NCBI RefSeq assembly: GCF_006345805.1
Contig: NC_043007.1
Coordinates: 42,904,001-42,968,000, forward strand
DNA from: Octopus sinensis
Lineage: Eukaryota
Reading direction: 5' to 3'
Length of the DNA stretch: 64,000 nt
Shown: piece after piece, positions 1,929 to 62,937 of the stretch
How positions within the stretch are numbered: position 1 is the first letter of the stretch
Layout of the letters: every line of letters starts with the position of its first letter
Translations under genes and position numbers: made by a program
The notes under the pieces: model-generated
The model's database searches: none
Told to the model about the DNA's origin: nothing
Seen by the model: the letters and a program-made list of their open reading frames with translations, nothing else

Positions 1929-2313
1929 CTAGCAGTATCGCCCGGCGTTGCTCAGGTTTGTAAGGGAAATAACTATAAAGCATTTTCAGAGAGTTATAGC
2001 CAAAAAATAGCAAAAAAATGGAAAAAAATGATGGCAAATTTTTTTTGAGAGTTAAAAAAGGATAAAGTTGCGTCCCCTAGACAGTTTGTGGTTCGTATTT
2101 CTGATTCTCGACCCCATGTCGAATTTATCGATTTTTTTCAGAACTGGGGGAACTTTTCAAAATTTTCGCTGCGTTAGTTTTGAATTATGACATTGGGCTA
2201 TGTGTGTGTCAAGTTTCATCAGAATCGGTTGAAAGCCGTAGTCAGGGTGAGGGTACAAGCAAACAGACACACAGAAACACGCACAGACAAACTGCCGTTT
2301 ATATATAGAGAGA
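1929..2313 (-). mobile_element. non-autonomous Helitron-like element
   Basis: A|TC 5' end at 2313, CTAG|T 3' end at 1929, subterminal hairpin 1941-1956, internal (ACAG)-like microsatellite. Confidence 0.75.
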
Positions 2314-4156: not shown

Positions 4157-5896
4157 TAGGAGCGAATTGTAGAATTGAGACGTAGTTTTACACAAAAAAA
4201 ATTAGATAAAAGTTAAGAATCTATTAGTAGTACTACTTGATAGCTAGAGAGAGAGGAGGAGAGAGAGTGTGTGTGTGTACAAGAGAGAGTCCATCACCAT
4301 GAAAAAATGGCACATCGGTTAAAGTGTGAGAGACGATCAAGAAAGCAGGACAATACTCAGTAGCTTCAGGTTACAAGAGAGAAACCTAAGCCATTACAAA
4401 AGACGAATATAATTCGGTCTGTGTGTATTTAACAGGTAATCTTAAACAGCATTCCTGTAGCAATACAAATGATATTTACAGAATATAATGAGCCTCTATC
4501 TTGAAGTTTGGGACACTATTTGAGGAACGAGAATTCACCAAAGATCAGATTCTTGTAAATAATGTTTACATCAAAGTCACCAAACTGATTGCAAAATATG
4601 AATACCGTGTGAGGCCAGACTACAAATACCTTTGTTTGCCTACAATACTTCACAGAAGGAAGAGGTGAGATATTGTAAATGTCTATTAAAATATTGTCAA
4701 ACAAAATCAACCTCGATAAGCAGAGAATTGTAGAATTCCACTATATATTAAAGTGAAGTCATTCACTTAAGTTATTTAGAAAATAACTGTCAAATGAAGA
4801 AAAAAAGCAACTGTTACAACACGGAATACAAACAAGCGACTACATTAGTTAAATGAGTTAAAACAATTCGGAAATGGTATTAATAACAATTGGGAGAATA
4901 TTGATTGTAAAAGCTTTTTGATAATGGAAAAGACATATTGCAAATTATTACAATAGAGACTATGAGCTCTCCAGCCGTAAAAAAATAAATAAATAAAATT
5001 TAACTGGCTGGAGAAAGCTAGGCTAAAGGGTGTGTTAGGAAGAGTGACATGTGAGAGTAAGCCATTATAGGATAGTAAAAGGCTTGTCTCTCTACAATGA
5101 TGCAAATGGTAGTTGAACGAGAAAATCGGAGTTACAACTCATACAACTTCGCATTTATACACTTCCTATTTGTGGATATAAGTATATATTACCAAGTTTT
5201 TGTACAAAGCCGCTCATTGAAGGTATGTTAACGAAAGCGTTAACTGATTACTTCATAGTCAAGACAGCGTCGCACAAAGCTAGATACCAAATGTAAACAA
5301 CTAACAATGATTAGCATACAATGATAAATATAGTTACCTGTGTGGCTTTGATGACTTTGATCCCTTGTTCTGGTAAACATGTTGTAAGATGAAGAACGCA
5401 AATAAAGAAGAAAATATAAATGCTATAAAAATTGTTCATTGTTAACATCCTCCTGACGCAACGTCAAAACATGATGTAGTCTCGTAATAAATATTACCCA
5501 GCCCCACACTAACAACGTGTCAGTGAGAATACAAAGAAATAAATAAAGAAAAAAGAGAGCGATAGAATAGTCACATTTATTATATTATAAATAAATAAAA
5601 ATTTTAATTACTATGGCACTACTTAATATGAGAGAATTTGCTGACGAATCATGTTAATTCTACGATATACAGCCAGTATGTAAGTCATGATTTGGTGCGG
5701 AGTTAATAATCAATGTCGGCTGGTTGGCAATCGATCGGCTGCTTACGTGATCAATTATTGCTAGCAAGCTCTTACCTTTACGGCTCAGTATTTCCTCGAC
5801 TACAGTCTCTTTCTAACCTCTTTGCAATTTTCGCTTGCTTCTGTTTGATTTCAGTTATTCGGAAAGTGAGGGAAGTAACCCTCAAAATTATCAGTG

Positions 5897-6028
5897 ATGA
5901 GTTTCCTATGTGGAGCGTTTGTTTTCCTTCTTTTGTCGTTTGTGGTGTCCATTCTAGCTAACTTCAGTCCGTTCATGGACAATGAACTCTTTCTCATTAA
6001 TTGGGCTGGACCGCTGCCCATAGAAAAG
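5897..6028 (+). CDS. ERLEC1: ER lectin 1 (XTP3-B) exon 1, signal peptide
   Basis: ATG 5897; MSFLCGAFVFLLLSFVVSILANFSPFMDNELFLINWAGPLPIEK: hydrophobic leader plus F-x-I-N-W-x-G resembling ERLEC1 FRVNWPG; donor GTAAGT, phase 0. Confidence 0.88.
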
Positions 6029-7494
6029 GTAAGTGGATTCCTCTTTGAGAGTATAATAGTTGTCGGTTTGCAATTTGATGCTTCAGGTATAAAATTAAAA
6101 AAGTCGACCGATCAGTCTACCATCCCGAAACATGGAATATAGGAACTTTCGTTTAATTCTGCTTTCTTTTCTCTAGGTTCGATTCCTTACATTTATAACT
6201 GAGAACAAATGAGATATTGTAACGTTCATTCCGTTTCTCAAGACTATAAATTTCCAAGGTATGACAAGCTAAATGGTTGCAGCAAAAAAATCTAAACTTT
6301 GTCGTTGACTGGTCTTCGTATAAACACGCTCAGCATTTTCTTTATAAATTATGTTAAATACTATTAAATACATTTGTGTTCCGAACCTTACTTCGTGGAG
6401 TCACTTAAGAAAACACTATATTTTAGTTTCTTGCAAGAAATTCTTTTGTGTTAATTTCCTACAAATAAGGAAATCTGAAATTATATATGAGTCTATTTTG
6501 GAAGTTTTTAATGTTGTTATGGATATTTTTCTCTTTTAGGAGTATGTAAACTAATAACAATGTTGCAATTAACAAATACTTTTAAGTTACATAATTTGAT
6601 ACGTAAATAAACACCATAAGGACCTCTTCTACCTTGATAAGGAATGTAAAGAAATGATCCGACGAGATAAAAGATGATTATAAAATGTTGCTGGAATAAC
6701 TGTTAGAGCCAAGTTAAATCTTTAAAATGTTATATATATATATAAATATAGATAGATAGATAGATAATGTTGTTTAATGGAGATGAATGAGAAAGGATTA
6801 CTCAATACATGTAGAGGATACTGTTTTTATTATTGAAACTAAGCTATCAACTTCAGTTTTAAATTCTTTAAAAAAAAAAGTTATTTATAAAATGTTATTT
6901 CATCCTACTCCACAATTTTCATCTATCCTTTGATCATTTTCAGATACTCAGTTCTCATCTGTTGCAGATAACATTCCCAGAAGTGATAGCACCTAATATT
7001 ATTCATTCAATGTCTATAGCCACATTGAATGCACATGCACAGGGAGGGAGAGAGAGAGAGAGAGAGAAAATTAAGTTTTACTTCAAGCTAGTAAAATGGC
7101 TACAAAAAGGTATATGACATAGGAAATATAGTGGGACTGTATTATTTGTGCATGTCAAAACTATACAAATAGACTAAAAAAAACAAAGACTGTTTAAATA
7201 TATACAGAGTGAAAACAATCATCTCCTACAAAACATGTCTGAAATACTTTACTTGGAAATTGTCACACTATATGAAGTAAGGCTATACAATTGACATTTT
7301 AGAGAATTATAAATTCAGTTGACAGCAGAAGTACTGGCTAACATTTACCAATGATATGTATTACAGTCTCTATTGGTCAATGAGTCAATGTACCTGTGTC
7401 AAGTTCTACAAGCAATTATAAATGATACATATAATATGAGACTTCATAAAAAAAATTAGCAAAGAAAAAAGATAAATGCTACAAATATATTCAT

Positions 7495-8714
7495 GTGCAG
7501 GCATGGCTGTGTGATAAGAAGCTTAGTTCCTAATCACATAGTTCTGGGTCCAGTCCCACCATGTAGCACCTTGGTAGATGGACCTAATTGATCTGTAGAA
7601 AAGGTGTAGGTAGAAATTCAATAAGATGTACCCAGTGTAAGAGTTGCTGCAATATCACAGGAAGCTTAACAGGGAAAATAGTTTTTGTACATGGGAGGTG
7701 CACAGGTACAATAAACACTAAAAAAATGTAAAGAAAATAGACTCCATCAAATGCCAGGCAGGCGGGTTGAAAAGCTAGAAGTAGTTGATAGTTTCCATTA
7801 TCTAGATGACCAAGTCAGTAGTGGAGGTGGATGCTTTGAGAGCATAGCTGCTAGAATAAGAATAGGCTAGGCAAAGTTCAGAGAGCTCTTACTTCTGTTG
7901 ATGACTAAGGGCTTATTCCTCAGAGAGAAAGACATTGTATGATGCCTGTGTGCAAACAGTCATGCTACACAGCAGTGAAACAAGGGCTGTGACCACTGAG
8001 GACATGTGTAGGCTTGAAAGAAATGAAGCTAGCATACTTCACTTGATGTGCAATGTCAGTGTGCATGTATGATAGAATATAAGCATCTTGAGAGAAAAGT
8101 TGAGCATAAGAGGAATCAATATGTTGTATAAGAGAGACAACTGCGTTGGTATGGTCTTGTGATACATATGGATGAGGACAGCTGTGTAAAGAAGTGCCAA
8201 TCTCAAACTGTGGAGGGAACCTGTGGAAGGGGTAAACTCAGGAAGTCATGGGATGAGGTGGTGAAGCATGATCTTCAAATGTTGGGCCTCACAAAGGCAT
8301 TGGCAAGTGACCAAGACCTTTGACGATATGCTGTGCTTGAGAAGACCTGTCAAGCCAAGTGAAATTGTAGTTGTGGCCGATGCCATTGTTGTATAACTGG
8401 TACCCATACTGGTGGCACGTAAAAAGCACCATTCAATAACAAGTGACCAATACCTTTGGTGATATGTCATATTTGAAAAGACCCATGAAGTGAAGTGAAA
8501 TCATAGTCATGGCTGATGCTGGTGTCATGTGACTGGCATGTAAAACACCCATTACACTCTGGGAGTGGTTGGCAATAGGAAGGGCATCCAGCCATAGAAA
8601 CCATACTAAATCAGATTGAAACCTGGTGTAGCCCAAGAGCTTACCAGTTTCAGTCAAACCATCTAACCCATGCCAGCATAGAAAGCAGATGCTAAATCAT
8701 GATGATGATGATGA
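7495..8714 (+). mobile_element. SINE head fused to RTE LINE 3' region
   Basis: 7495-7574 SINE family A head; 7575 onward matches RTE post-RT region (GRW-C--CRKGVGRNS) through the (GAT)n tail. Confidence 0.8.
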
Positions 8715-8726
8715 TTTTATATATAT

Positions 8727-8778
<52 letters not shown>

Positions 8779-8837
8779 TTAGAGATAAAACCACTATTAG
8801 GCAATTTTTCCCTGTAAGTTTGGATTTATTCCCTAAT

Positions 8838-8868
<31 letters not shown>

Positions 8869-8873
8869 GTGTG

Positions 8874-8930
<57 letters not shown>

Positions 8931-9711
8931 ATAACAAATAGTGAGGTATTGTCAATCTGGGCAACATACTTCGTAAAATCCCTGTTGGCACACCAGGCTA
9001 ACAATACTAGTCAGATTAGTGAAAAACTCCATGTAATTGTTTGGTAGGGTTCCAAGTTATGGTTCACCACAGTTCTATATTGTAACTTTTGGATGGGCTC
9101 CAGATGGACTGGTTTTTACAGAGTGATATATCAGAAACAAGTTAAAATAATGGTCATTACTTATAATTCTTTTATTGGAGCAAATTTAGCTTACAGCTGT
9201 TTCCAGTAGATCATTATAGGTACATCACAGATACGTTTACTCAATTGGTCTTTTGATAACTGAAGTAAAACCACCTAAGAAAATTAATGCTGCTTTCATC
9301 AGAACCTTTTCTCAAAATTACAAGCAGAGCATTTGAGGAATGGCTATTGTGTAGGAAAGGTGGAGGAAGATTGGGAGATTAAAAGAATAAAACAGGAAAA
9401 ACAAAATAAAATAAAATTTTAACCTTATTTTTTAACTTTCATCCAGTATTGGAATCATTACCCAATTGTAGTTGTTTCCTAATTACCGCACGGTTATTTG
9501 TATTGTTATTTCTGTGATTACTTTGGAAGATTATCTTCTTGTTATTTTATTAGTATTATTCATATTGATATTGATGTTGTTGATGTTGATGTCACCTTCG
9601 TTATAATTGTTTTGGTATAACTTTACTCTGCAATCTGAAAGTATTCTCAGTGAATTACTCTGCAAGATTACTCTAATCCTCTACATCTTAGTTTACTATA
9701 ATGCTTTATTT

Positions 9712-9897
9712 AGAAACTTCAGGGCGACGGTTGAGGAAGTATTGGAGGGCTAAGAGACCATCGTTGTGGGGAATCACTGTGTATAGAGATTTGATGTCCA
9801 AGATGAAGAGGAGGTGTGAGATGCTGAGAGGGAAAAAGAAGGAATTGAAGAGGCGAACGGCGTGATTAGTGTCATGTATGTGGGATGGGAGGGCAGC
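9712..9897 (-). mobile_element. Penelope-like element reverse transcriptase fragment
   Basis: LPSHIHDTNHAVRLFNSF..LFILDIKSLYTVIPHNDGLLALQYFL is the PLE RT motif D-x-x-SLYT-x-IP. Confidence 0.85.
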
Positions 9898-10335
9898 CAC
9901 GTACAGGGACGCTGTCAGTAACGTGAAGGTTGGCAATGAGTACAATGAAAAATTCTGTGTAGAAGTAGGGGTCCACCAAGGATCAGCCCTCAGCTCCCTC
10001 TTATTCATCATAGTCCTCCAGCCAATAACAGAAGAATTCAAGACAGGTTGCCCCTGGGAACTCCTCTATGCTGATGACCTGGCCTTCAGAGCAGAATCAC
10101 TACCAGAACTAGAAAAGAAATTTCAGGTGTGGAAGCAAGGTTTAGAATCGAAGGGCCTTAGAGTCAATGTTGCAAAGACCAAAGTTCTAGTAAGTAGGAA
10201 GGCAAACACTTCAGGTAGGTAGCCCTGCTTAATCTGTAGAAAAGGTGTAGGTAGAAACTCCATCAGATGTACCCAGTGTAAGCTATGGACACATAAGAGG
10301 TGCAGCAACACCAAAGGAAGATTAACTGGGAAGAT
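9898..10335 (+). mobile_element. RTE LINE RT fragment
   Basis: GVHQGSALSSLLFIIVLQ..WELLYADDL..GLRVNVAKTKVL. Confidence 0.92.
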
Positions 10336-10610
10336 TGCTCCTTCATACTACCATTTGTTTTGTAGTTTACAGAATCATTTAGAGGACATTACTTTTGCAA
10401 ACCAGGAGGTCAAAACTGACATTTCAGAGTTCTTGGCTTTGAAACCAAAAGAGTTTTACATTGATGGGATTAAAAAGCTTGTAACTACATGAAAGGAAGT
10501 GATAGATAATTAGGGAAACTACATTGATGATTAAATTTCAATTAAATATAACATTTGATCACTTGTTTTCTTTATTCAAAATTTTGACAGAACTTATGGG
10601 ATGACCTGAT
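10336..10610 (+). mobile_element. mariner transposon 3' fragment with right TIR
   Basis: PSYYHLFCSLQNHL...EFYIDGIKKLV and terminal ttatgggatgacctgata resembling the TIR at 58048-58077. Confidence 0.75.
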
Positions 10611-10653
10611 ATATATATATATATATATATAGATATATATATATGTGTGTGTG

Positions 10654-10687
<34 letters not shown>

Positions 10688-11025
10688 CGCGCGCATATGC
10701 ATAAAAATATTTTAAAATTTCGTTAGACATACTAAAATATTATTAAATTTCATTCAATAATTTCAAAAAAGGTAAAATTGGACAGAGCATATGGCATGAC
10801 CTGATATATATATATGTATATGTATAGATATGTGTATATATATATATATTTATGTATCTATCTATTTATATATATATATATATACACATGTATCTATTAT
10901 ATATATATACACACATGTATCTATTGATATATATATATATGTAGGTCCCGGGTTGATTCGGGTTAACCACAGTAAATAAGGTACTCAATACATAGCAGAG
11001 TAAAATTAATTTATTATATAGAAGG

Positions 11026-11076
11026 AGCTTCTACAGGACTAGAACTGTTTCATTCAAGAGAAATCTTCAGGAAGCT
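11026..11076 (-). ncRNA. type I hammerhead ribozyme motif, mirror copy
   Basis: exact reverse complement of 12388-12438. Confidence 0.7.
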
Positions 11077-12387
11077 AGTTAACAAGAATTGTATTGGCAT
11101 TTATACATTTAGGCAGGTTTAAAGGGGTGTTGGTGGGGGACTTTTTTGGGGGTAGGCATAGCGCAAAAATCATACTTGGGGGAGTGGTCAGGGAGTAGTG
11201 TTAAATTAGATAGGAGAATAAATAAAAAATAAAAAATAAAAATAAAAAATATAAAATATAAAATATAAAATAAAAATAGAAAATAAAAAAATATCAAAAA
11301 TAAAAAATAAAATAAAAAAATAATAAAATAAAAAATAAAAAATAAAATATATATATATATATTATATATATATATATATATAAAGGGGGGGAAAAAGAGT
11401 TTTAGGTAAATAAGGAGATTCTCACTTACCTCTACACATACACACATATATATACAATCACACATACATATACATATCTACACATACACATATATATGTA
11501 TACATACACACACTCACTTGCATACACGTATACACACATGTATAATATACACACACCACGACAACACATACATATACACACAGAAAAATATATATATACA
11601 CATACACCACATCCACTCACATACACGCATACACACACAATATCCATACACACATGCACACACAGCACACTAGTCCCTATATACACATATATACCATACA
11701 CACATATATATACACCCACACATACACACACATGTGTATGTGTATGTATGTGTATGTGTGGGTGTATATATATGTGTGTATGTGTATATATGTGTATATA
11801 GGGACTAGTGTGCTGTGTGTGCATGTGTGTGTATGGATTTTTGTGTGTATGCGTGTATGTGAGTGGATGTGTGTGTATGTGTATATATATATATATTTTT
11901 CTGTGTGCATATGTATGTGTGGTCGTGTGTGTATATATACATGTGTGTATACGTGTATGCAAGTGAGTGTGTGTATGTATACATATATATGTGTATGTGT
12001 AGATATGTATATGTATGTGTGATTGTATATATATATGTGTGTATGTGTAGAGGTATAAGTGAGAATCTCCTTATTTACCTAAAACTCTTTTTCCTCCCCC
12101 CTTTATATATATATATATATATATTTTTTTTTTATTTTTTTTTTTATTATTTTTTTATTTATTTTTTATTTTTTTATATTTTTTTATTTCTATTTTTTAT
12201 TTTTATATTTTTTTATTTTATTTTTTATTTTTTATTTTTTATTTATTCTCCTATCTAATTTAACACTGACTCCCTGACCCTCCCCCAAGTATGATTTTTT
12301 GCGCTATGCCTACCCCCAAAAAAGTCCCCCACCAACACCCCTTTAACCTGCCTAAATGTATAAATGCCAATACAATTCTTGTTAACT

Positions 12388-12438
12388 AGCTTCCTGAAGA
12401 TTTCTCTTGAATGAAACAGTTCTAGTCCTGTAGAAGCT
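12388..12438 (+). ncRNA. type I hammerhead ribozyme motif (PLE-type)
   Basis: agcttc CTGAAGA t-ttc-tctt-gaa-t GAAA cag-ttctagtc-ctg TA gaagct: stem I 6 bp, core CUGANGA/GAAA, stem III, GUA cleavage triplet; U.U at first stem II pair. Confidence 0.7.
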
Positions 12439-12524
12439 CCTTCTATATAATAAATTAAGATATATATATATATATATACACATATGTATCTATAATTACA
12501 TATATAATTATATATTTATGTTCC

Positions 12525-13532
12525 CGCAATGAGGAGGGAACCAGGCTGCTGGAGTTCTGCGATGCAAATGATCTTATGGTTTGCAACACTAACTTCAGGA
12601 AACCTACCAGTCACCTACCGATCAGGCCGACATACCAGCCAAATTGACTACATCCTTGCCAGGAAAAGGGAAAGATGGCTGCTTATAAATGCCAAAACCT
12701 TCCCAGGCGAAGAATGTACCCCACAACATAGACTGGTAGTTAGTGACTTTAGGATCAGGACTAAGAGGACGACCAATATGGAGAAGAAGGATCTGGAAGT
12801 TTAAAGATCCTGTGAATGGATAGAGATTTAGGGACATATTACTTGAAGCCTTTGATGAAGTAGAAGGGGATAGAGCTTCACATGGGGTAGAAGACAACTG
12901 GACGTTTCTAAGGGACAACCTGCTGAGAGCCACTGACCAGATCTGTGGCTGGTGCAAAGTCCCCTCTCGACCCAAAATAACGTGGTGGTGGAACAATGTT
13001 GTAGACAGGGCTATTAGAGAAAAGAGACAGGCTTGGAAGGACTGGAAGAATGATGGTAGCAGGGAATTGTATCAGACTGCCAAAAGAGAAGCTAGGAGAC
13101 AGGTCTATTTAACCAGAGGGGAAGCAGATAAAAAAAATGTGCCAATGTTCTGTGCCATGAGGACCAAAGACTTGAGGTATTTCGTGTTGCAAGACACTGT
13201 GTAAGAGAGAATCGTGATGTGGTAAGAAAGAAATGTGTTCGCATGGATGATGGTTCACTTGCGCCAAATGAGGATGCAAAGAGAGAGGTTTGGAGACACC
13301 ACTATGAAAGGTTGCTGAATAAAGAAAATGAATGGGATAAAGAGAGTCTGCCGAATGTCAACCCAACAGAGGGACCAGCTATCCGAGTTGACAGTTCCTT
13401 GGTAGTTAAGGCAATTAGAAGCATGAAGACAGGGAAAGCCCCAGGTCCATTAGGAATCACTGCAGAGATGCTCAAAATATCTGGTAGTGTCAGCTATAGC
13501 CTAGTCACCCATATAGTTAATCAGGTGATACA
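12525..13532 (+). mobile_element. RTE LINE fragment (APE C-terminus and linker)
   Basis: TYRSGRHTSQIDYIL..PGEECTPQHRLVV and EVWRHHYERLLNKENEW..MKTGKAPGP; frameshifts and stops. Confidence 0.92.
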
Positions 13533-13659
13533 AAGCAACCTTATTTCATTTTTCATTTTTGCTTGTAATTGCGCCATTTATATTGCATTAACTTCCTTAA
13601 CTCCTTTCAACCTTGATTTTTATATTTTTTTATAGTTTATTTTTATAATTTATTTTTTT

Positions 13660-14950
13660 TATTTCTATATACACGCACACATACACACACACATACGTAC
13701 ATATCCACAAACACACATATACCTCCCACACACACCACACATATACAACACACATACATGTACATATACACACACATGCACAAACACACACCCACATACA
13801 CCCATGCGCACACACACATACACACGCACAGGAATGCACAGATACCTATCCCACACAACCCCACGCACATACCTTTATACACACACACGCATACATAAAC
13901 GTACATACACACAACAAAATGCACACATAACCTGACACCCATCTCCATGTTCACACACACATATACACACGCTCACACATACACACAAGCACACACACAC
14001 ATGCACATATACACATGCACATACATACACACACATGCACATATACACACGTAATACACACACACTAGCACATGTTCGCACATATACCTCCAACACACAC
14101 AATACACATACAGACATGCATACAATTACACACACATGGGCACAAACACACATGCACAGACACACATGCACACACATACACTCAGGTACACACATATACA
14201 CCTACACAAACCCCACACACAACTCCCCACACAACCCATGCGCACACACATTCACATACACACACATACATACACTCACAATATATGTACACACACGCAT
14301 ACACATACGCATACACGTGTATATACACAAGCATACACATACACACATGCACATGCAAATGAACCTACACATACCTCCCATACACACACAGCACACACGC
14401 ATACATACATGTACACACACACACATACAAGCACACACGCACACATACACAAAGTACAATTACTCCACACACACACACACACCGCAAACAAAACACACAC
14501 ACATACTTAAAACTACCACTACCTTTTAGTGACCATTCTCCTAAGCACATGTGTAGGTAGACACACAACAGGCAGCCACTCCTACCAAAATTCTTACTAT
14601 GACCTTAAAGGAAACTAAGCCCAACCACACACACACACACACTGGCCTGCGTGAACGCACATACCCACACATACACACACACATACCTCCTTCTGTTGCA
14701 CTCTCCTGTCTTTGAAGAAACTTTTTCTTCACCCATTCCTTTCCCATCATTTCAATATGTGACCGCATGTGTATCGTTGGCGATTTTCTTTCTCCATCTT
14801 CCCTTCCTTGGACTTCTCCTTTTTTCTATATCTCTAAGAGCTCCACTTGAAACGTTAAATCCGCCTTCTTTCTTTCCTTTCCTGAGTGTTCAACAACACT
14901 ATCCTTGTTCCACGTCCTCGCGTTGTTGTGTTTTCTCTTTGTTCATGTTT
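13660..14950 (+). repeat. complex CA-rich microsatellite block followed by pyrimidine-rich PLE-like tail
   Basis: degenerate (CA)/(CATA) array 13660-14690; tail contains aagagctccacttgaaacgtt. Confidence 0.65.
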
Positions 14951-14954
14951 GGAA

Positions 14955-15000
<46 letters not shown>

Positions 15001-15147
15001 ATTATATATATATATATTAATATTATTAATAGTTAGGGAATGTAATAATTTCAAGCTAACAGGGAAAAAAATTTTCAATTTAGCACACTAAATCAAAATT
15101 CACAATATATATATGTGTGTGTGTGTGTGTGTATATATGTATGTATA

Positions 15148-15189
<42 letters not shown>

Positions 15190-15191
<2 letters not shown>

Positions 15192-15613
15192 AAACTGAAA
15201 TGCGAAAAGTTTGTTTGTTTGTTGGTCTGGTTTTGGCATTGAGAACGGGTTAAAGGCCACTAGATCCCGTCGGATTGACTCCAAAATTTACAGGGACATG
15301 TAAAATGAGGTGAGGATGCCAGTGGACTAGGTTAGAAATCCCTATTTTAAAAGGTGTCGTTGCTAGGGCCAAAAACGCCAACCACTCTGTGAGTGTAGTG
15401 GGTGCTTTTTTTCGTGCCACCGGCACAGGTGCCAGGGGGGCTGGCAGCGACCACAATCGATTGGTGCTTTTTACGTGCCACGCACACAGAAGCCAGTCTA
15501 GGCGGCGCTGCAATCGGCCACGTTCGGATGGTGCTTTTTAAGTGCTGAAAGGAAGCAACAGAAAGTAACAACCACACTCTTACCCGCACATAGAGCGAGT
15601 CACCGTAAGCTAG

Positions 15614-15614
<1 letters not shown>
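15190..15614 (+). mobile_element. Helitron-like non-autonomous element with internal RTE-tail fragment
   Basis: (TTTG)n near 5' end, CTAGT 3' end at 15610-15614; about 15373-15545 is reverse-strand RTE tail repeat also seen at 37790-38010. Confidence 0.6.
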
Positions 15615-15645
<31 letters not shown>

Positions 15646-15829
15646 AGAAACAAACCGCTATCTAGAAATTAATTAAATATCTTATAATTATTCTAAAAAC
15701 CTCATATCAAATGTTTTATTTGTTATGAGATTTTTAGAATAATTATAAGATATTTAATTAATTTCTGTGTGGTTATTATAGATAATATCTTTTCATTATT
15801 GATAGAATAACTAAATAGCAGTTTGTCTT

Positions 15830-16515
15830 TAAATTCTATATATATATTTACACACACACACACATATATTTACATAATATATATATATATATATTATATA
15901 TATATAATAATATATATATATATATATATACATATATATAATATTTATATATATACATACATATATATATATTTATATACATACATATATATATATTTAC
16001 ATATATACATACATATATATATACATACATATATATATATTACATATATACATACATATATATATATTCATATTATATATATATATACATACATATATAT
16101 ATATTTATATATATACATATAATATATATTTACATATATACATACATATATATATATTTACATATATACATACATATATATATATTTACATATATACATA
16201 CATATATATATATTTACATATATACATACATATATATATATTTACATATATACATATATATATATTTACATATATACATACATATATATATATTTACATA
16301 TATACATACATATATATATATTTACATATATACATATATATATATTTACATATATACATACATATATATATTTACATATATACATACATATATATATTTA
16401 CATATATACATACATAATATATATATTACATATATACATACATATATATATATAATTACATATATACATACATATATATATATTTACATATATACATACA
16501 TATATATATATTTAC

Positions 16516-16583
<68 letters not shown>

Positions 16584-16595
16584 ATATTTACATAT
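15830..16595. repeat. AT-rich minisatellite (tttacatatatacatacatatatata-type units)
   Basis: roughly 24-28 nt unit reiterated many times from about 16095 to 16595. Confidence 0.9.
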
Positions 16596-16679
16596 ATATG
16601 TTATTTAGAGATAGTAGTCCCCTTCATCACACACAATATATATATATAAATAAATATATATCCATATGCATCGGTATTC

Positions 16680-19105
16680 ATCGTGGCAAGATGTACCTTT
16701 CATACCTCTGGACAGTCAGTAGCCAAAGAAACAGAGTTCAACTCAAACTTGCAGTAACTTTCCTTGTTTTTTGTCCAAGAACTCTTGAATTCTACTATTT
16801 TACTATCATCGGAGGATAAATTTACACAAATTTATATACAACCTGGAGAAACAAATATAAACCAAAACTAAACCCAAGATCAGTTCTAAAACTAGGCCCA
16901 CGTGTACAATTATTTTCTCTTCATTTGTATTAAACACACCACTCATTCTGATTTGTACTAAATACACTGAACTCTCTCACACACACCCAGATATAGCCAC
17001 AGTGCATTCATAATTATACATAAAGTCATAAATAACTGACATACAGTGTATAATACTGTCCTATCCACTGAATATGGCCTAAAACGCCACTGGATAGAAA
17101 ACGAAATCAGTGCACTGATAAACACTTGGTAGACTTACCATAATGATAGTGTAAAATCACTAAAATATTAGTGTCACAATCCTTTTACAGATCTGTAAAA
17201 CAGATCGAAAGCAAAGTGAAAGAAATCACAAGATCGTTTTATACTTTACACATGCATATAATAACACTGGAAGCCATACATGTCAACAGACGTAGCGCAC
17301 CGACTGACCCAATGCGAACAGGTCAGGGGTCACTTCAATGACCCGTTAACTAGCAACAGACAACATCCTCATTGATATCACCATCTGACCTGATTCCACC
17401 CAGCCCCACTGTTGCAAATCAAGTTCCACTGCCGCTACAGCAACAACAACAACAGCCTGCTACTGCTACTACCTTAGGACCACTGAACAATGAGCCTGCC
17501 AATATAGAAAAACCTCTACTATGCCCACGTCAAAAACCCCATCGTTACCATTCTCGAGGTAACTGAAGATTTGGCCCCAGCAGCACCAACAAGGGATGCT
17601 GTGCTTTTTTCCATCCTACCTTATGCCATAGACTTGTTAAGGACACCTGTCCATGTGGTATAATGGGAAAAATCTACCCTCACCTCCACCCCAAATACTG
17701 TCCTAAATACAGAGTCTATGGCCCTGATCCTCAATATAGATGCACAAAAGGCAATGGATGCACCTTCTTTCATCCTAAACTGTGCCGAACTTCTGTGTCA
17801 CTAAGGATGTGCTTGAACCCAGAATGCAACCACCACCATCTGAAGAGCACAAAACGATCGAAAAATAAATATAAACAGCAAGAGAGGAGACCTACGACAA
17901 CAACAAAAACAAAATACAACCACATTTCACCTCCTACAACCAAACAACGAAGATAGAACTATGGAAAAACCATAACACCAAATAACATAAATATGAACTA
18001 TGTATCATCTGACCAAGTGGCAAACTAAAGAGGCAACTCTTTTTTACTTATCTAGAAAATATGAAGGCCAACCTAAGCCAAGAGATCTAACGTGCTATCA
18101 GCAACCATTTATGCAAAACACAAGAAATATACACCCACCACCAACTAGAAAATCATACACACACAGCTCCATACAAAAACTACCGTCACTGCTACCTCTG
18201 TACAACATAAACCATAACAATAAGTTCTTATAACAATGCAAAAATCAAACTACCCTTACCTCGACATTCCTGTTAAATGTACGCGTCATCAACCCATCAC
18301 TCATTGCCCAAAAATGGAAGATCCATCAAGAGTTGGCTTACTGAAACGGCACATTGCTTCCCTTTCTTTATCCTTACTGTGCTCCACCTAAACAGCACAC
18401 ATATGGGTGCCAAGGTGAAAATAAAAGATTTCACCATCTTTCTCCATGACTCCTTTTCAGTTGATGCCAAAGACATATTTTCCAATGGCTATTGTGAATC
18501 AATATCACTATTCAACAAGGCCAAAGACATAAAGCATTTTTGGCTTTTACAGGCCTCCCCAAGCACCTCTAAAGTGCTTTGAAGAGTGCCTCAACAAAAT
18601 CAAGTCCTTCCTTCGAAAATACAACTCTAGAAACATACTTGAGGTGGGTGATTTTAACCTCACTCATATAAACTGGCCCACGAATACTCTGGAGTTAGGC
18701 AAATGCTCTACATCAGATAAAGCAGTGGCAGAATTACTCTTTAATTTAATGTATAAATTCTTCCTGACTCAGCTAGTCCTCGAACCAACAAGAGAGAATA
18801 AGACAATCTTGGATCTAATATTAACCAACCACTCTAGCTACGTTCACAGTATTTCAGTTGGAAAAACTCTCCTCCCAGACCACGACATGATACTCTGAAA
18901 TTTTAATTCCCAGCATATCAAAACCAAACCTGTCAATCCCACTCCACAGCACTTATTTGACAACATAAACTTTTACAAAGCAGACTGAGGAGCAATCAGA
19001 AAAATTGAATCACCCCAGAGGGTACTCACTAAATGAATTAACGGCATGACTGATCTTGATTACTGGGACCACCTTAAAGCCTTGAAACTCTACTCTCTCT
19101 CTATA
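16680..19105 (+). mobile_element. decayed CR1/L2-group LINE: Cys/His zinc-finger ORF1, APE endonuclease, RT deleted
   Basis: ORF1 repeats C-x-F/L-HP-x-x-C (HPKYCPKY..CTFFHPKLCRTS..CLNPECNHHH); APE GDFNLTHINW..PTREN..LDLILTN..DHD; then 3' motif LDYWDHLKALKLYSL. Confidence 0.8.
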
Positions 19106-19193
19106 TATATATATGTATGTATGTATATACCTGAGTAAACACATAAAACAAGGTGAGAAAAAAGTAGTACTCTAATAGTAGAGGTAGAGTAAT

Positions 19194-19342
19194 ATGCTTT
19201 ATTATTAAAACTGCAAAAACATCCCAAAAGTATAAAAAAAAAATCACAAAAAACTTCTCAGAGTTTCACTTTTTCAAACAGGTATATGAAACTTTAAGTA
19301 GCAGTTTTTTGTGATGTTTTTGCAGCTTTAATAATAAAGCAT
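19194..19342. repeat. fold-back (inverted repeat), probably PLE-derived
   Basis: atgctttattattaaaactgcaaaaacatc..gagtttca versus tgaaacttt..gatgtttttgcagctttaataataaagcat; loop about 18 nt. Confidence 0.8.
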
Positions 19343-20199
19343 GTATATATATGAATACGAGTGTAGGCTCGAAACGTTAAAGACTTTTTCAGTTCCCAAG
19401 CGCTATACTAATACATCTGTTTGTTGTCTACTCCACCTGTCTTTATCTTTTGTTTTTTTCTCCCTATATGAATACATATATATCTATAATACATTAAAAG
19501 TCAGTTTGAATCTTGCTTACTTGCAATGTTACTCAGCCAAATTGGCGCATAATGGGAAAATACTATGAATTAAGTTTACCCTGAAATGTTAATATGAAAC
19601 ATTTTTCTTGGTAATTGGTAAAGTGGTTTTTGAGATTTTAGAGATTTTCAGGATATAAATATTTTAATCATTTAGCAATATTTTTAAATGAATGTGATTT
19701 CAAATATGTAAGCTGTTTGTACAGTAAGTATTTATATTTTAGCTTTCTTTAAACAGATATTTTAATGTGAATACCATTACAAAAATTTTTTTTTGGCATA
19801 TTTAAAAAATATTCTAAAGTGAAAATGACTTTAAAATATGGTAAATATTTCCTAAAAGGCCTATTCATAACCTCAGTGCGAAATAGTTTTTTTACCATAG
19901 GATTTTTTCAAGTGTATTCAATGTTTCTCACTTCCAAAAGATTTGGCTGCTATTTCTAGTACACCCTGCTACCATGTAACAGCTATTTGCAATAAAGGAC
20001 CCGAAATACATGTTACATGGTAGCAGGGTGTGCAAGAAATATCAGCCAAATCGTTCCTTTTCTGGGGAAAGGAGCTGTTTACATGTGATTTCGACGTCAC
20101 ATTTGTTGGAAGCATACAAAATATCCTGGAAAAGAAAAACCCACAAAACAAAATTCTGTTGCTGAGAAACTCAGTTTCCCAGTGGGTCATGGGTAGTCT

Positions 20200-20425
<226 letters not shown>

Positions 20426-21103
20426 GTGTGTATGATCTATAACAAGAATAAGAATGAAGAAAATTATGTCTTTAATTAGTGATTAAAAGGGATTCATTAA
20501 CTCCTTTTACTTCTTATTATGTGTATATGTACACATATGTAAACTTAGTGGATGTGACTGAAGGCACATCAAATTAAAGTAGTCATCTATGTATCGTGCT
20601 TAGCGTATATTGATAAGCAAGATTCTTCGATTTTCATCTGAATAACATCTCTTAGAGATGTGCTGTGTTGAAAACAGATCATATACTAGAAGCAGACAAA
20701 AATATCATTCAAGCAGTGAATAATAAGAATGCCAGATGTATTTGAGCCTTTTTAAGGCCTTGCCATTGATGGATACTCACAGACACTTACCTAAACAACA
20801 TCTGTTGCTTCTGATGTATAGGAATCAATGAATTTACTTATTTACTTATACTGCAAATAGTTGTCAGGTTGAAAACCTCAGTGTATGCAATTGAAAGCAC
20901 ATGAAATTAAAATTGCCATCTATGTATCTTACTCAATATATATACACTGTTGACAAGCAAGATCCAAAGCATTAAAGCATGCTTTCTCTCCCTATTGAAG
21001 CAGTAAACAATACTATCCTTGTCAAGCATTTTTCTTGTGTTGTCTTTTTTGATGGTTATTGTCTTTACACTTATATATGTGTGTGTGTGTATTATATATA
21101 TAT

Positions 21104-21137
<34 letters not shown>

Positions 21138-21289
21138 ATACATATATACGTGTTTCAGTCATTTGACTGTGGCTATGTTGGAGTACTGCCTTTTGTCGAA
21201 CAGTTCAACCTCAGAACTTATTCTTTGTAAGTCTAGTACTTATTCTATCAATCAATTTTGCTGAACCACTAAGTTACAGAGATGTAAAC

Positions 21290-21510
21290 ACACCAACATT
21301 GGTTGTCAAGGAATGGTGGGTGGAACAAACACAGACACATACACACATACGACAAGCTTCTTTCAGTTTCCATCTACCAAATCTACTCACAAGGCTTTGG
21401 TCAGCTCAAGGCTATAGTAGAAGACACTCACCCAAGGTGCCATCAGTGAGACTGAATCTAGAACCATGTAGTTGGGAAGCAAGCTTCTTACCACACAATC
21501 ACACCTGCAC
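21290..21510 (-). mobile_element. tRNA-derived SINE (family A)
   Basis: reverse complement of 54225-54430. Confidence 0.8.
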
Positions 21511-21639
21511 CTAGCTAAGCTTGTGCCTACACACACACACACACACATATGTGTGTTTATATTTACATACACACATAAGCATACACTCACACATACATAT
21601 ATATATGTACATACATATATAGTTTAGTGTTCCATTATA

Positions 21640-22020
21640 GGAAGGATCAACAAAGAAGTACACTGTCTAGTAAGAGGTTACTATCATTTAATATACACAA
21701 AAAAGAGCTACTTATAGTCTTCTTTTTGACACATTGATAAAGATAAAGCCACTAAGTTGGTTATCCATGTATGGGTTCTGAAGGTCAACTGCACAGCCCA
21801 TACAATCAAGTGGAGAATCATGGAGAAATTTAAACCCTATATAAATGGATCAAAGAGATGGAAGTTAAGTGTAGCTGAAATATTACACATTCTTTTGAAA
21901 TCCAAGAATTCCACCACACTACTCAACTCTAGATGCAAAATTTTTAGCAAATGCAAGTACAAAGACAAATTTCTTTTGTCAAACTGGAGATATCTCCCTC
22001 TTAAGATTGAGTAGCTATCT
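21640..22020 (+). mobile_element. Penelope-like element GIY-YIG endonuclease C-terminal fragment
   Basis: HVWVLK...IKWRIMEKFKPYINGSKRWKLSVAEILHIL..LLNSRCKIFSKCKYKDKFLLSN follows the PLE pattern W-I-..PY-NGSK-C-LC--EK..LLN-R-E--SKC-H--KF. Confidence 0.82.
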
Positions 22021-24433
22021 CACAGATTTTAACCTGCACTGTTATATTATTCTAGACCAGCTAGATTAATTGTTATTTCTACAATGGGGACAAAAATCTT
22101 GATTTTCGTACTTCTTTTTATTCCACTTTTTGCATCAACCTTCTTCTTGTCCTTCCCATTTTTTCCTCATATTTTCTCACAGACCAGCGTCCTGGTTTTC
22201 ACTAGGTTTCATGGTATGCACTGACTCCAAAAGATTGCTTGGAGACACATGATGTGTTATAAAATATGCCAAATTCTTGTATCTCTACAACATGAAACTA
22301 TTAGTAGCCTTTTTTTGTGTGTGTATTAAATGACACACACACACACAAGGTAGTTGGTATTAGGAAGAGCATCCAGTCATAAAAATCATGGTGCAGTTTT
22401 CTGGCTTGCCAGCTGCTGTCAAACCATCCAACCAATGCCATCATGGAAAACAAACATTGAATGATGATGATGATGACTCATATATATGTGATTACAAATC
22501 CCATAGCATGCTACCTTAGGCAAATGCCTTCTACTCTTTTACTTTAGTCTTGAGGTGATCAATATCATGTGAATAAAATATGGTAGATGGGAACTGTGTA
22601 GAATCCCATTGCATGTGTGTGTGAGAGAGAGAGTTATTTTTGAACTGGTCTAAAAAAGTGTTGTTGCTTATATTGTTATATTTATGACCTATAACTTAGA
22701 GACTCTATCAATAAGGTTTAGTAAAATACATAGCAGACAAAACATTATTTACTAAATGCTTGAATGCAGTGCTCTACTGTGGCTGCAATCCAATGACTGA
22801 AACCAGTAAAAGAATAAATGAATATAACAATATTTTGTGTCAAAATAATGCTCACACTTTATTCTATTCATGCAACAAAATTCTTTTCAGTTATACAATG
22901 TGTTTTTGTATGCTCTTTGACTTGCAGTAAGATATTGGCATTTAATGTAGATGTTGATGGATAAAACAAAACAACATATGATTCACAGAAGCCAAGTTTT
23001 ACATTATGTTGTTCACTGCTTTACAGGGAGCAACATAATGTAAAATATTGATACCTATGGTTAAGTAACTCTGGTTTTATTGATCTAAGAGCAGAGGAAT
23101 GCAAAGTCAACTACTGCAGGACTTGAATATGCACTTATGTTGCACTGGATCAGATATTCTAATATATTTAGGCCATATTATTGGAGCCTAAAATATCGAT
23201 TTCTTTTGTTTAAGCACGATTAATTAATTTTTTTTTTATTAGGAACAGAGAAATGATAACAATGATGTCATTTTTAGAATCTTTCAAGCAACCATTGAAA
23301 GGATTAAACACTTACCAAATGGTTTCTTATCAAAGTAATGTCCTTTAAACTATTGGGGTGTTGAATATTTATGAAAACTTCATCACCATGCTGTGATTCT
23401 TGGGAGAGCCCTGACAGACAAACTAGGAACAATAATTTATGAGCCATGGGTGAGTTTGAGCTCAGGGCTGGAAGCTGAATAAACATCTGTTGATAATACA
23501 GGAACTTGCTACACATAACAGTAGACTGTACCACTTTGATAAAGAATTCTGCCCAAAATGTTTGACTTAACTGCTTCACAACATAGCTTATTCCATTTTT
23601 TGAGTGTTTTGTATTATTACATGGTGACTATTTATCTCTAAGCAGACTAATTCATTGAGAGTTAAGAGCAGCACTGGTAATGGGACATAGGCCTTTGATT
23701 CATTGGTGTGTAGGCTGGCATATGTTCACCTGTCATTTGTTTCTATGGCGATATCTCCATTATTTTAACATCCATTTTTCATGTTTGCACTGGTCAGAGA
23801 AGTGTATGCTGGAGCAGTTGCCTTTCCTGTCATCAGCCACATCTATTTCCAAGCAAGGTATCAATTCTCCAGTCTATCAAACAATGAACAGCCTAGATAT
23901 AGTTATGCAGTGGAAACAAACAGCACCATTTGAACAAGAATTTTGTTTACAAAGATTGCACAGCATGTCAAAAAGCCTGGATATGCCCCTTGTGGTTGAC
24001 TGCAAGCAAAGAATACTGCTTGTATGGTTGTTTATTGTCAACAAACACACATGTAAAGATGAAGAGAAACATGAACTCACTCACAGAAATACGCAATTTC
24101 ACATAAACACATACATAGATATATGATAGGCTTCTCCAGTTTTTGTTAATTTCACTCACAAGGTATGGGGTGACCCGCAGCAATAGCATAGAATGCCAGC
24201 AAATGATTTACTTGCAGCAGGATTGAACCCCTAATCATGTGCTTTTGAAGTGAACTTCTTAACCACACAGCTATGTCTGGCTTTTAATTATGCTAAGTGA
24301 AAGTTGTTGGGTAGGGAAGAGTCTAAGGTAAATTTATGACACTTTCCAATGTCAGTATTACAGTTACTGGCTTAAAGCATATAACTGAATATTTGTTATT
24401 TATTTTCATTATTGTCATTTATTTTCTTTGCAG

Positions 24434-24529
24434 CTCGACTTCCCAAGTTCACGTCTAGTAATGGTGATGACGAACAATAAAGAAAAATACCATTGTATTC
24501 TACCAGAAGAAAGGCTTATTGAAAATAGT
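24434..24529 (+). CDS. ERLEC1: ERLEC1 exon 2
   Basis: ttttctttgcag acceptor; LDFPSSRLVMVMTNNKEKYHCILPEERLIENS resembles MTTAHKEKYKCILP; donor GTCTGT gives the phase 0 needed by exon 3. Confidence 0.85.
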
Positions 24530-59104: not shown

Positions 59105-59535
59105 TCATAGATAGAGAGAAGCAAATGTTAGATATCCTGTATGGCCTGGCATCGTAGTTGGAGGTACACCACTTTTGACCTGGAAATAATCTTTTGTTTT
59201 ACGTCCAACCAAATCATAACTGTAAAAAGTATCGTTATTATCTGCACTTTTACATTCTTTATCAGTCTGTTGTTTTTCAAGTTCATTATTTTCTTGTAAA
59301 CTGTTTTCTAAACATTTGATCTTATTTTCTGTAGTACTCTCACTTTTGTTTGTTAACATGGTGTTTTCATCTTCTATACCGCCAAGACAAGGTATTGGAA
59401 TGTTTATTGTTCGAACATCAAAATTCCGTACCAGACATTCAACAGTTGAACAGTCTTCAAAACCATTTTCTCTTAATACTTCATGTGACTTTTGGACTTG
59501 CTCAATACATGGAGAAAATGTACATATTCTTCCAC
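59105..59535 (-). CDS. TRMT61A: TRMT61A coding exon 3 (terminal)
   Basis: GGRICTFSPCIEQVQKS...MPGHTGYLTFASLYL-stop; joined CDS 1026 nt = 341 aa + stop. Confidence 0.95.

Positions 59536-60126: not shown

Positions 60127-60597
<471 letters not shown>

Positions 60598-62436: not shown

Positions 62437-62937
<501 letters not shown>

What the first reader, a model, noticed from the sequence alone, without database searches (positions are those of the whole stretch)
11026..12438. Two outward-facing hammerhead ribozymes at the ends of an intronic palindrome; the sense copy could cut ERLEC1 pre-mRNA
Seen: 12388-12438 folds as a type I hammerhead (stem I agcttc/gaagct, CUGAAGA, short stem II ttc/gaa, GAAA, stem III cag/ctg, GUA site after 12432), with an exact mirror at 11076-11026. 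Established: Penelope-like elements carry minimal type I hammerheads in their pseudo-LTRs. Inference: in ERLEC1 intron 1 the left arm is transcribed first, so the sense ribozyme emerges next to its perfect antisense partner. Self-cleavage and long-duplex formation would be mutually exclusive folds, giving a possible switch on intron 1 processing. The U.U pair at the base of stem II may reduce activity or require dimerisation.
Basis: partly seen in the sequence, partly recalled or inferred. Interest (0 to 1): 0.85.

Follow-up and report, generated by a model that had tools for sequence, protein, structure and literature searches.

The report
Young Penelope-like retroelement insertion with hammerhead motif
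The two "ribozymes" are one hammerhead-like motif copied twice by a recent mobile-element insertion in intron 1 of the Octopus sinensis ERLEC1 gene, and nothing suggests that it regulates the gene.

Summary
The motif is in the sequence exactly as described. At 12388-12438 (+) there is a 6-bp stem I, CUGAAGA, a 3-bp stem II above a U.U, GAAA, a 4-bp stem III and a GUA site. An identical mirror lies at 11076-11026 (-). A match of this quality is expected about 4e-4 times per 64 kb. No Rfam hammerhead model reports it, even at E<=10.

The window is Octopus sinensis, and the site is in ERLEC1 intron 1 (6029-24433). The orthologous O. vulgaris locus has an empty site. The palindrome is therefore part of a 1,518-bp lineage-specific insertion (10941-12458). 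It sits in a (TA)n tract and is flanked by a 15-bp target-site duplication.

The insertion is two 5'-truncated copies joined head to head, 3' ends outward, with a 65-nt tail at one end only. The motif is on the element's sense strand, 26 and 91 nt from the ends. This matches the published signature of Penelope-like element integration. No reverse transcriptase/endonuclease ORF and no second family copy could be found.

The ERLEC1 switch idea is not supported. The hammerhead fold is a minor conformer, while the palindrome folds at -1060 kcal/mol with the motif fully paired. Verdict: a new member of a known kind, of modest interest.

The parts
10926..10940 (.). Left copy of the 15-bp target-site duplication, GATATATATATATAT
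   Evidence: The O. vulgaris empty site has a single copy.
10941..11005 (-). 65-nt tail present at the left end only. It is the 3'-most part of the inferred element RNA and ends in an A/C-rich stem-loop, CCCG-AAUCAACC-CGGG.
   Evidence: It has no inverted counterpart at the right end.
11006..11735 (-). Left arm: a 5'-truncated element copy whose sense strand is the - strand. It holds unique sequence, an A-rich minisatellite, (TA)n and a CA-rich tract.
11026..11076 (-). Hammerhead-like motif, left copy. The predicted cut is between 11032 and 11031, which is 26 nt from the arm end and 91 nt from the insertion end.
11736..12458 (+). Right arm: an inverted copy of the left arm whose sense strand is the + strand. 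The centre is a CATG palindrome in CA/TG repeats.
   Evidence: 9 substitutions and 55 gap columns in 754, nearly all in low-complexity tracts.
12388..12438 (+). Hammerhead-like motif, right copy, in ERLEC1 sense. The predicted cut is after 12432, 26 nt from the insertion end.
12459..12473 (.). Right copy of the 15-bp target-site duplication
5897..6028 (+). ERLEC1 exon 1, followed by a GTAAGT donor
24434..24526 (+). ERLEC1 exon 2, preceded by a TTTGCAG acceptor. Intron 1 is 6029-24433. The exon's 3' end is approximate.

Best explanation
Window 10941-12458 is a recent retrotransposition product in Octopus sinensis that is absent from O. vulgaris. It was most likely made by Penelope-like element (PLE) machinery.

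Shown:
- A 1,518-bp insertion sits in a (TA)n tract and is flanked by a 15-bp target-site duplication.
- It consists of two copies of the same roughly 730-790-nt non-coding sequence joined head to head.
- One end carries a 65-nt extension that the other lacks.

Inferred:
- Both strands of the staggered target cut primed reverse transcription of the same RNA species, at two start sites 65 nt apart.
- The two cDNAs then joined at a CATG microhomology. On this geometry the outward-reading strand of each arm is the RNA sense strand.
- That strand carries a type I hammerhead-like motif 26 nt (short end) or 91 nt (long end) from the RNA 3' end. This is where PLE hammerheads lie.
- The motif belongs to the element's own biology, where it would act as a dimer or with protein help if it acts at all. 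It is not part of ERLEC1 biology.
- In ERLEC1 pre-mRNA the insert should zip into a roughly 720-bp hairpin that buries the sense motif. The likely consequence is long double-stranded RNA, which is a substrate for ADAR (adenosine deaminase acting on RNA) or for small-RNA pathways, rather than self-cleavage.
For: Species and locus:
- The window equals O. sinensis CM016869.1 at 100% identity.
- The O. vulgaris orthologue L001 skips window 10941-12461 with a 14-bp overlap.
- Joining the flanks with one copy of the duplication reproduces O. vulgaris at 99.5% identity.
- The target-site duplication and the tail are shown, and the arm alignment.

Published PLE signature:
- The Anolis element PAc cleaves and extends both DNA strands. 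It starts reverse transcription at two internal sites in an AC-rich stem-loop, and the tail is the stretch between them.
- In PAc the hammerhead cut is at +26 and the start sites at +111-118 of the ORF, that is 85-92 nt downstream. Here the distance is 91 nt (PMC11167929).
- O. vulgaris has 31 PLE families with 336 recently active insertions (PMC13282606).

The motif:
- It is rare by chance.
- The central CUAG of loop 3 is palindromic, and a two-copy cofold at -27 kcal/mol forms an extended helix III. A palindromic loop 3 is a listed trait of real animal hammerheads (PMC4209133).
- Axolotl HHR_Amex2 has a U.U at the base of helix II, reaches 22% cleavage per hour and cleaves better as a dimer (PMC7229834).

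Masking:
- In the -1060 kcal/mol fold of the palindrome, all 51 nt pair with the left arm.
Against: - No reverse transcriptase or GIY-YIG endonuclease coding sequence lies in or near the insert.
- No second copy of the arms was found in the window or in L001. Nothing turned up through protein-space searches or in viral or metagenome contigs. Family membership and covariation are therefore untested.
- The tail is 65 nt, not 30-40 nt.
- The motif lacks G10.1-C11.1 and the long helix II of PLE minimal hammerheads (PMC4209133), and Rfam models do not report it.
- Stem II pairs have only 5-7% probability, against about 40% for a competing AAGA/UCUU helix. A UAGAAG/CUUCUA hairpin also competes for stem I.
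- The arms meet at nearly the same truncation point, which also fits snap-back copying.
- Other insertions that differ between the two species at this locus show 12-18-bp overlaps at their junctions. The LINE (long interspersed element) machinery active in these genomes can therefore make such duplications too.
Confidence: 0.6

Rival explanations
1. This is a LINE-mediated insertion (RTE, CR1 or Dong type) of a non-PLE transcript. The transcript became palindromic through snap-back of the cDNA, or through twin priming, in the CA/TG tract. The hammerhead-like motif is a chance match.
For: - A 15-bp target-site duplication is typical of target-primed reverse transcription in general.
- Other lineage-specific insertions at this locus have 12-18-bp overlaps.
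- The arms are symmetric to within about 8 nt around a CATG centre.
- There is no PLE ORF.
- About 17 chance motifs of this quality are expected per genome.
- Rfam is negative.
Against: - The chance expectation for this window is about 4e-4.
- The motif falls on the inferred sense strand, within 26 or 91 nt of the 3' ends.
- Classical twin priming gives adjacent, non-overlapping segments, not two full copies.
- The one-sided tail and the (TA)n target match the PLE signature (PMC8557442, PMC11167929).
- The arms show no similarity to LINE fragments in the window.
Confidence: 0.25
2. One reading: the sense hammerhead and the long duplex are alternative folds that act as a switch on ERLEC1 intron 1 processing.
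For: The geometry is right. The motif is sense to ERLEC1, lies in intron 1 and is transcribed after its antisense partner. The core nucleotides are intact.
Against: - The insertion is absent from O. vulgaris ERLEC1, so the gene works without it.
- The hammerhead fold is -7.3 kcal/mol with about 2% occupancy in isolation, and is 4.4-5.3 kcal/mol above the MFE in arm context.
- The competing duplex is -92.7 kcal/mol for the 51-mer and -1060 kcal/mol for the hairpin. The complement is held adjacent by the already zipped stem.
- Retrozyme hammerheads are depleted from introns in Xenopus (bioRxiv 10.64898/2026.07.22.740005).
Confidence: 0.03
3. The palindrome is an artefact of the long-read assembly, for example a fold-back chimeric read.
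For: The arms differ mainly by indels (55 gap columns against 9 substitutions). In the unique outer 260 nt there are only four 1-nt indels, which looks like long-read error.
Against: - A fold-back read would mirror the local flank. Here the right arm stops 65 nt short of the left and joins directly to a second copy of the 15-bp target sequence, followed by the correct downstream flank.
- The inserted sequence is foreign to the locus.
Confidence: 0.05

Closest known systems
Penelope-like element (PLE) insertions and their pseudo-LTR hammerheads (Cervera & De la Pena 2014, PMC4209133; Craig et al. 2021, PMC8557442; Frangieh et al. 2024, PMC11167929)
   Same: It shares the inverted 5'-truncated dimer, the tail at one end, the (TA)n/AT-rich target and a sense-strand type I hammerhead-like motif near the 3' end. 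The cut-to-end distance of 91 nt compares with 85-92 nt in PAc. Loop 3 is palindromic, which suggests action as a dimer.
   Different: There is no RT/GIY-YIG ORF. The tail is 65 nt, not 30-40 nt. Helix II has 3 bp plus a U.U instead of 6-8 bp with G10.1-C11.1. Helix III has 4 bp and an 8-nt loop instead of 0-2 bp.
Animal non-LTR retrozymes with canonical type I hammerheads, for example axolotl HHR_Amex2 (PMC7229834). A preprint argues that they are non-autonomous PLE derivatives (bioRxiv 10.64898/2026.07.22.740005).
   Same: It is non-coding. Helix I has 6 bp and helix II spans four positions with a U.U at its base. Activity as a dimer is likely, and PLE machinery probably mobilises it.
   Different: It is not a 170-400-nt tandem repeat. 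Only two copies exist here and they are inverted. No circular RNA evidence is available.
Intronic hammerheads of amniotes, HH9 and HH10 (Rfam families; de la Pena & Garcia-Robles 2010, from my own knowledge)
   Same: It is a type I hammerhead-like motif in the sense strand of an intron of a protein-coding gene.
   Different: HH9 and HH10 are conserved across species and cleave efficiently. This motif is lineage-specific, gives no Rfam match and is masked by a perfect antisense copy.
L1 twin-priming inversions (Ostertag & Kazazian 2001, from my own knowledge)
   Same: Both target strands prime reverse transcription, which produces an inverted segment flanked by a target-site duplication.
   Different: Twin priming yields two different, adjacent parts of one RNA. 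Here both arms copy the same roughly 730 nt.

Membership tests
Hammerhead ribozyme, type I | Conserved core C3-U4-G5-A6-N7-G8-A9, G12-A13-A14, A15.1-U16.1 and H17 | tested here: met
   CUGAAGA, GAAA and GUA are all in register.
Hammerhead ribozyme, type I | Three helices around the core, with helix I open-ended | tested here: met
   Helix I has 6 bp, helix II 3 bp plus a U.U, and helix III 4 bp. The fold is -7.3 kcal/mol against an MFE of -8.5, and the z-score against shuffles is 0.17.
Hammerhead ribozyme, type I | G10.1-C11.1 closing pair of helix II | tested here: not met
   The pair is U.U. Axolotl HHR_Amex2 is a natural active precedent (PMC7229834).
Hammerhead ribozyme, type I | Reaches the gathering score of an Rfam hammerhead covariance model (the hammerhead families are among the 4227 searched) | tested here: not met
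   No hit at gathering score, nor at E<=10 on 1.5 kb or on 86 nt.
Hammerhead ribozyme, type I | Covariation in helices I-III among homologues | not testable with these tools
   Only the two identical palindrome copies are available. No other copy was found.
Hammerhead ribozyme, type I | Site-specific self-cleavage | not testable with these tools
   This needs an in vitro transcription and cleavage assay.
PLE minimal hammerhead (PMC4209133) | Helix II of 6-8 bp and helix I of 4-5 bp | tested here: not met
   Helix II has 3 bp and helix I has 6 bp.
PLE minimal hammerhead (PMC4209133) | Helix III absent or 1-2 bp, with palindromic 15.2-16.2 and loop 3 | tested here: inconclusive
   Helix III has 4 bp, but loop 3 (UUCUAGUC) has a central CUAG palindrome. 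The dimer cofold extends helix III.
PLE minimal hammerhead (PMC4209133) | [quoted passage not shown] | tested here: inconclusive
   The U after A9 can be read as a bulge, but that leaves an extra U before G12.
Penelope-like element insertion | An inverted 5'-truncated copy adjoining another copy, with 3' ends outward | tested here: met
   Polarity is inferred from the geometry of the target-site duplication.
Penelope-like element insertion | An optional tail extension at one end only | tested here: met
   A 65-nt tail lies at the left end only. It is longer than the published 30-40 bp.
Penelope-like element insertion | A microsatellite or AT-rich target | tested here: met
   The insert lies in G(AT)n, and the empty site is seen in O. 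vulgaris.
Penelope-like element insertion | An RT plus GIY-YIG ORF, or homology to the pseudo-LTR of an element that has one | tested here: not met
   No GIY-YIG signature was found in the window, L001 or L002, and the arms are non-coding. Pseudo-LTR homology cannot be tested without the Octopus genome or its repeat library.
Non-LTR retrozyme | Head-to-tail tandem repeats of 170-400 nt, each with a hammerhead | tested here: not met
   There are only two motif copies and they are inverted.

The most novel reading that the evidence does not exclude
The inverted-dimer insertion acts as a self-masked intronic ribozyme. The antisense arm normally silences the sense hammerhead. Heavy A-to-I editing or helicase unwinding of the hairpin, both plausible in an octopus, would release it. 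Cleavage of ERLEC1 pre-mRNA would then depend on editing, in O. sinensis only.
Probability: 0.02. Interest if true: 0.7.

Novelty: new member of a known kind. Interest (0 to 1): 0.3.

Why it matters
If the Penelope-like assignment holds, this is a dated insertion, present in one of two sister octopus species, that preserves the whole integration intermediate. It shows the target-site duplication, both reverse-transcription start sites, the tail and the cDNA-cDNA junction.

That would be in vivo evidence for the dual-strand priming seen in vitro for the Anolis element. It would also point to a cephalopod hammerhead variant with a U.U at the base of helix II.

For ERLEC1 itself the insertion probably matters little. 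The most likely effects are a long intronic RNA duplex and a cluster of AATAAA hexamers.

Tried and rejected
- Rfam search of the whole window at gathering score, and of 1.5 kb and 86 nt at E<=10: no hammerhead or other ribozyme family. The only hits were sub-threshold miRNA-like matches to the CA/TG hairpin.
- DNA transposon or foldback element: rejected. The two ends are not inverted repeats of each other because of the 65-nt tail. A 15-bp target-site duplication also exceeds those of the cut-and-paste superfamilies I know of.
- tRNA-derived SINE head in the tail (GGTCCCGGGTTGATTCGGG): ARAGORN finds no tRNA. That orientation would also put the RNA 3' end at the palindrome centre, which does not fit target-primed insertion.
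- Assembly artefact: rejected on junction structure.
- Search for further family copies. I ran blastn of the arm against the window and L001. I used a translated-ORF trick in the 5.8-billion-protein index and HMMER against 1.84 billion representatives (one chance hit at E=8.5e-4). I also scanned viral contigs and ran a skeleton scan of metagenome contigs (8 chance hits without stems). All were empty.
- Exact look-ups of two ORFs in or near the insert, to find independent assemblies: not on record.
- O. bimaculoides orthologue as an outgroup: the gene range was too long or not on record.
- A LINE ORF query to sample more Octopus DNA: only one short hit.
- Minimal-hammerhead descriptor on the window and L001: no hits.
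- No PLE protein was available to retrieve Octopus PLE loci.

Full report
**Observation.** The motif is in the sequence exactly as reported. It reads AGCUUC / CUGAAGA / U-UUC-UCUU-GAA-U / GAAA / CAG-UUCUAGUC-CUG / UA / GAAGCU at 12388-12438 (+). An identical reverse complement lies at 11026-11076. All invariant hammerhead core positions are present. The closing pair of helix II (positions 10.1/11.1) is U.U instead of G-C.

**Chance.** My own descriptor finds only these two hits in the window. In 320 Mb of Markov-1 sequence with the window's composition, 771 sites had the core plus stems II and III. Only 2 of them also had a 6-bp stem I. That gives about 4e-4 per 64 kb, and about 17 chance motifs of this quality per 2.7-Gb genome. 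Eight exact matches to the 19 fixed bases in the metagenome collection all lack stems I and II. No Rfam hammerhead family, and no other ribozyme family, reports the motif at gathering score or at E<=10, even when only 86 nt are searched.

**The two copies are one event.** The palindrome spans 11006-12458 with its centre near 11735. The arms differ at 9 substitutions and 55 gap columns out of 754, almost all in low-complexity tracts. The outer 112 nt, which include the motif, are 100% identical. The "exact mirror" therefore adds no evidence of conservation.

**Where the window comes from.**
- ERLEC1 exons lie on the + strand.
- The window is 100% identical to Octopus sinensis GCA_006345805.1, CM016869.1.
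- Exon 1 is 5897-6028 with a GTAAGT donor, and exon 2 begins at 24434 after a CAG acceptor.

**The key result: an empty site in the sister species.** The orthologous locus of O. vulgaris (L001, GCA_951406725.2) is 98-99.5% identical. It skips window 10941-12461, with a 14-bp overlap at the junction. Joining the O. sinensis flanks with one copy of the repeat reproduces the O. vulgaris sequence at 99.5% identity. The insertion is 10941-12458 (1,518 bp). It lies in a G(AT)n tract and is flanked by the 15-bp duplication GATATATATATATAT at 10926-10940 and 12459-12473. It consists of a 65-nt segment present only at the left end (10941-11005) followed by the 1,453-bp palindrome.

**What the architecture implies.**
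- A 15-bp target-site duplication indicates target-primed reverse transcription from staggered nicks.
- With that geometry, the strand that runs 5'->3' from each flank into the insert is cDNA.
- The RNA sense strand is therefore the outward-reading strand of each arm: - on the left and + on the right.
- That is the strand carrying the hammerhead-like motif. Its predicted cut site is 26 nt from the right end and 26+65 = 91 nt from the left end.
- The two arms meet at a CATG within CA/TG repeats. This fits two cDNAs of the same RNA species joined at a 4-nt self-complementary microhomology. Snap-back copying is the alternative.

**Comparison with Penelope-like elements (PLEs).**
- Craig et al. 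report that PLE insertions are heavily 5'-truncated. They often carry an adjacent inverted 5'-truncated copy and a 30-40-bp tail at one end only. They prefer microsatellites, including (TA)n, and bear hammerheads near their 3' ends (PMC8557442).
- Frangieh et al. show that the Anolis element PAc cleaves and extends both DNA strands. It initiates reverse transcription at two internal sites in an AC-rich stem-loop, and the tail is the sequence between those sites.
- In PAc the hammerhead cut site is at +26 and the initiation sites at +111-118 of the ORF, which is 85-92 nt downstream (PMC11167929).
- Here the long end is 91 nt downstream of the predicted cut and falls in an A/C-rich stem-loop. 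The short end defines a 65-nt tail.
- PLEs are recently active in this lineage. O. vulgaris has 31 families with 336 recent insertions (PMC13282606).
- This architecture was worked out without reference to the motif, so the two lines of evidence are independent. That is why I favour a PLE-type origin.

**What is missing.**
- There is no RT/GIY-YIG coding sequence in the insert or elsewhere in the window, L001 or L002.
- No second family copy could be found with any available route.
- The tail is about twice the published length.
- Other insertions at this locus that differ between the two species have 12-18-bp junction overlaps. LINE machinery could therefore produce the same duplication length.
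- A LINE-mediated event with a fortuitous motif remains a real rival (about 0.25).

**The motif as a ribozyme.**
- It is not the PLE "minimal" hammerhead. That type has a 6-8-bp helix II, a conserved G10.1-C11.1 and little or no helix III (PMC4209133).
- Its geometry is closer to canonical animal type I hammerheads, with a 6-bp helix I and a four-position helix II.
- The central CUAG of loop 3 is palindromic, and two copies cofold at -27 kcal/mol with an extended helix III. This is typical of hammerheads that act as dimers.
- The U.U at the base of helix II has a natural precedent. Axolotl HHR_Amex2 reaches 22% cleavage per hour as a monomer and more as a dimer (PMC7229834).
- Thermodynamic support is weak. 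The hammerhead fold is -7.3 kcal/mol against an MFE of -8.5. Stem II pairs have 5-7% probability, against about 40% for a competing AAGA/UCUU helix that sequesters A6-A9.
- The z-score against shuffles is about 0.
- In 120-210 nt of arm context the hammerhead fold lies 4.4-5.3 kcal/mol above the MFE. A UAGAAG/CUUCUA hairpin competes for the 3' strand of stem I.

**The ERLEC1 switch.**
- In the pre-mRNA the antisense copy is transcribed 1.3 kb earlier.
- The 51-mer duplex is -92.7 kcal/mol. The whole palindrome folds at -1060 kcal/mol with every motif nucleotide paired to the left arm.
- Because the inner stem zips first, the complement is already held in place when the motif emerges.
- The insertion is absent from O. 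vulgaris ERLEC1, so it is not a conserved regulatory feature.
- The left-arm copy is on the - strand, where no annotated transcript runs. The TMEM87-like gene on that strand ends upstream of ERLEC1 exon 1.
- By inference, the more likely effect is a long intronic RNA duplex open to ADAR editing or small-RNA processing.

**Verdict.**
- The Penelope link is plausible and gains independent support.
- "Two ribozymes" is really one motif duplicated by one event.
- The regulatory switch is unsupported.
- This is a new member of a known kind, of modest interest.

Noticed in passing
window 1929-2300; window 63485-63804; L001 12887-13903; window 13533-16301 vs L001 20282-22401: Several other TE-sized differences separate O. 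sinensis from O. vulgaris at this locus. Two are 372-bp and 320-bp insertions in O. sinensis and one is a 1,017-bp insertion in O. vulgaris, all with 12-18-bp junction overlaps. One block is rearranged. The hammerhead-bearing insertion is therefore one of several recent insertions here.
   Followed up: partly
window 11217-11341 (+): The A-rich minisatellite of the left arm puts 11 AATAAA hexamers on the ERLEC1 sense strand inside intron 1. These are potential premature polyadenylation signals, although they too lie within the hairpin.
   Followed up: no
window 11657-11821, both strands: Sub-threshold Rfam matches to miRNA precursor families lie at the palindrome centre (mir-3149 at 73 bits against 100 required, mir-5014 at 71 against 101, and others). 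They reflect the CA/TG hairpin, not miRNA genes.
   Followed up: yes
window 10380-10606 and 10774-10802: A mariner-like transposase C-terminus (KEFYIDGIKKLV) and two similar terminal sequences ending in ...ATGGGATGACCTGA / ...ATGGCATGACCTGA are each followed by expanded TA/TG microsatellites.
   Followed up: no
window 9700-10340, 12521-13635, 30295-31020: LINE fragments (endonuclease and reverse-transcriptase pieces, about 82% identical to one another) flank the insertion. A protein search with one ORF found only a single short ENA hit, so Octopus TE proteins are nearly absent from the protein index.
   Followed up: partly
window about 5448-5897 and 59105-62781: ERLEC1 (+) lies head to head with a TMEM87-like gene (-), about 450 bp apart. 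A GCD14/TRMT61A-like gene lies on the - strand downstream.
   Followed up: no
window 5912-5914: The ERLEC1 signal peptide differs at residue 6 between O. sinensis (Gly) and the O. vulgaris protein P0001 (Glu).
   Followed up: no
window 12430-12447 (+): A local UAGAAG/CUUCUA hairpin overlaps the 3' strand of stem I. It appears in the MFE of the 140-nt 3' region instead of the hammerhead fold.
   Followed up: partly
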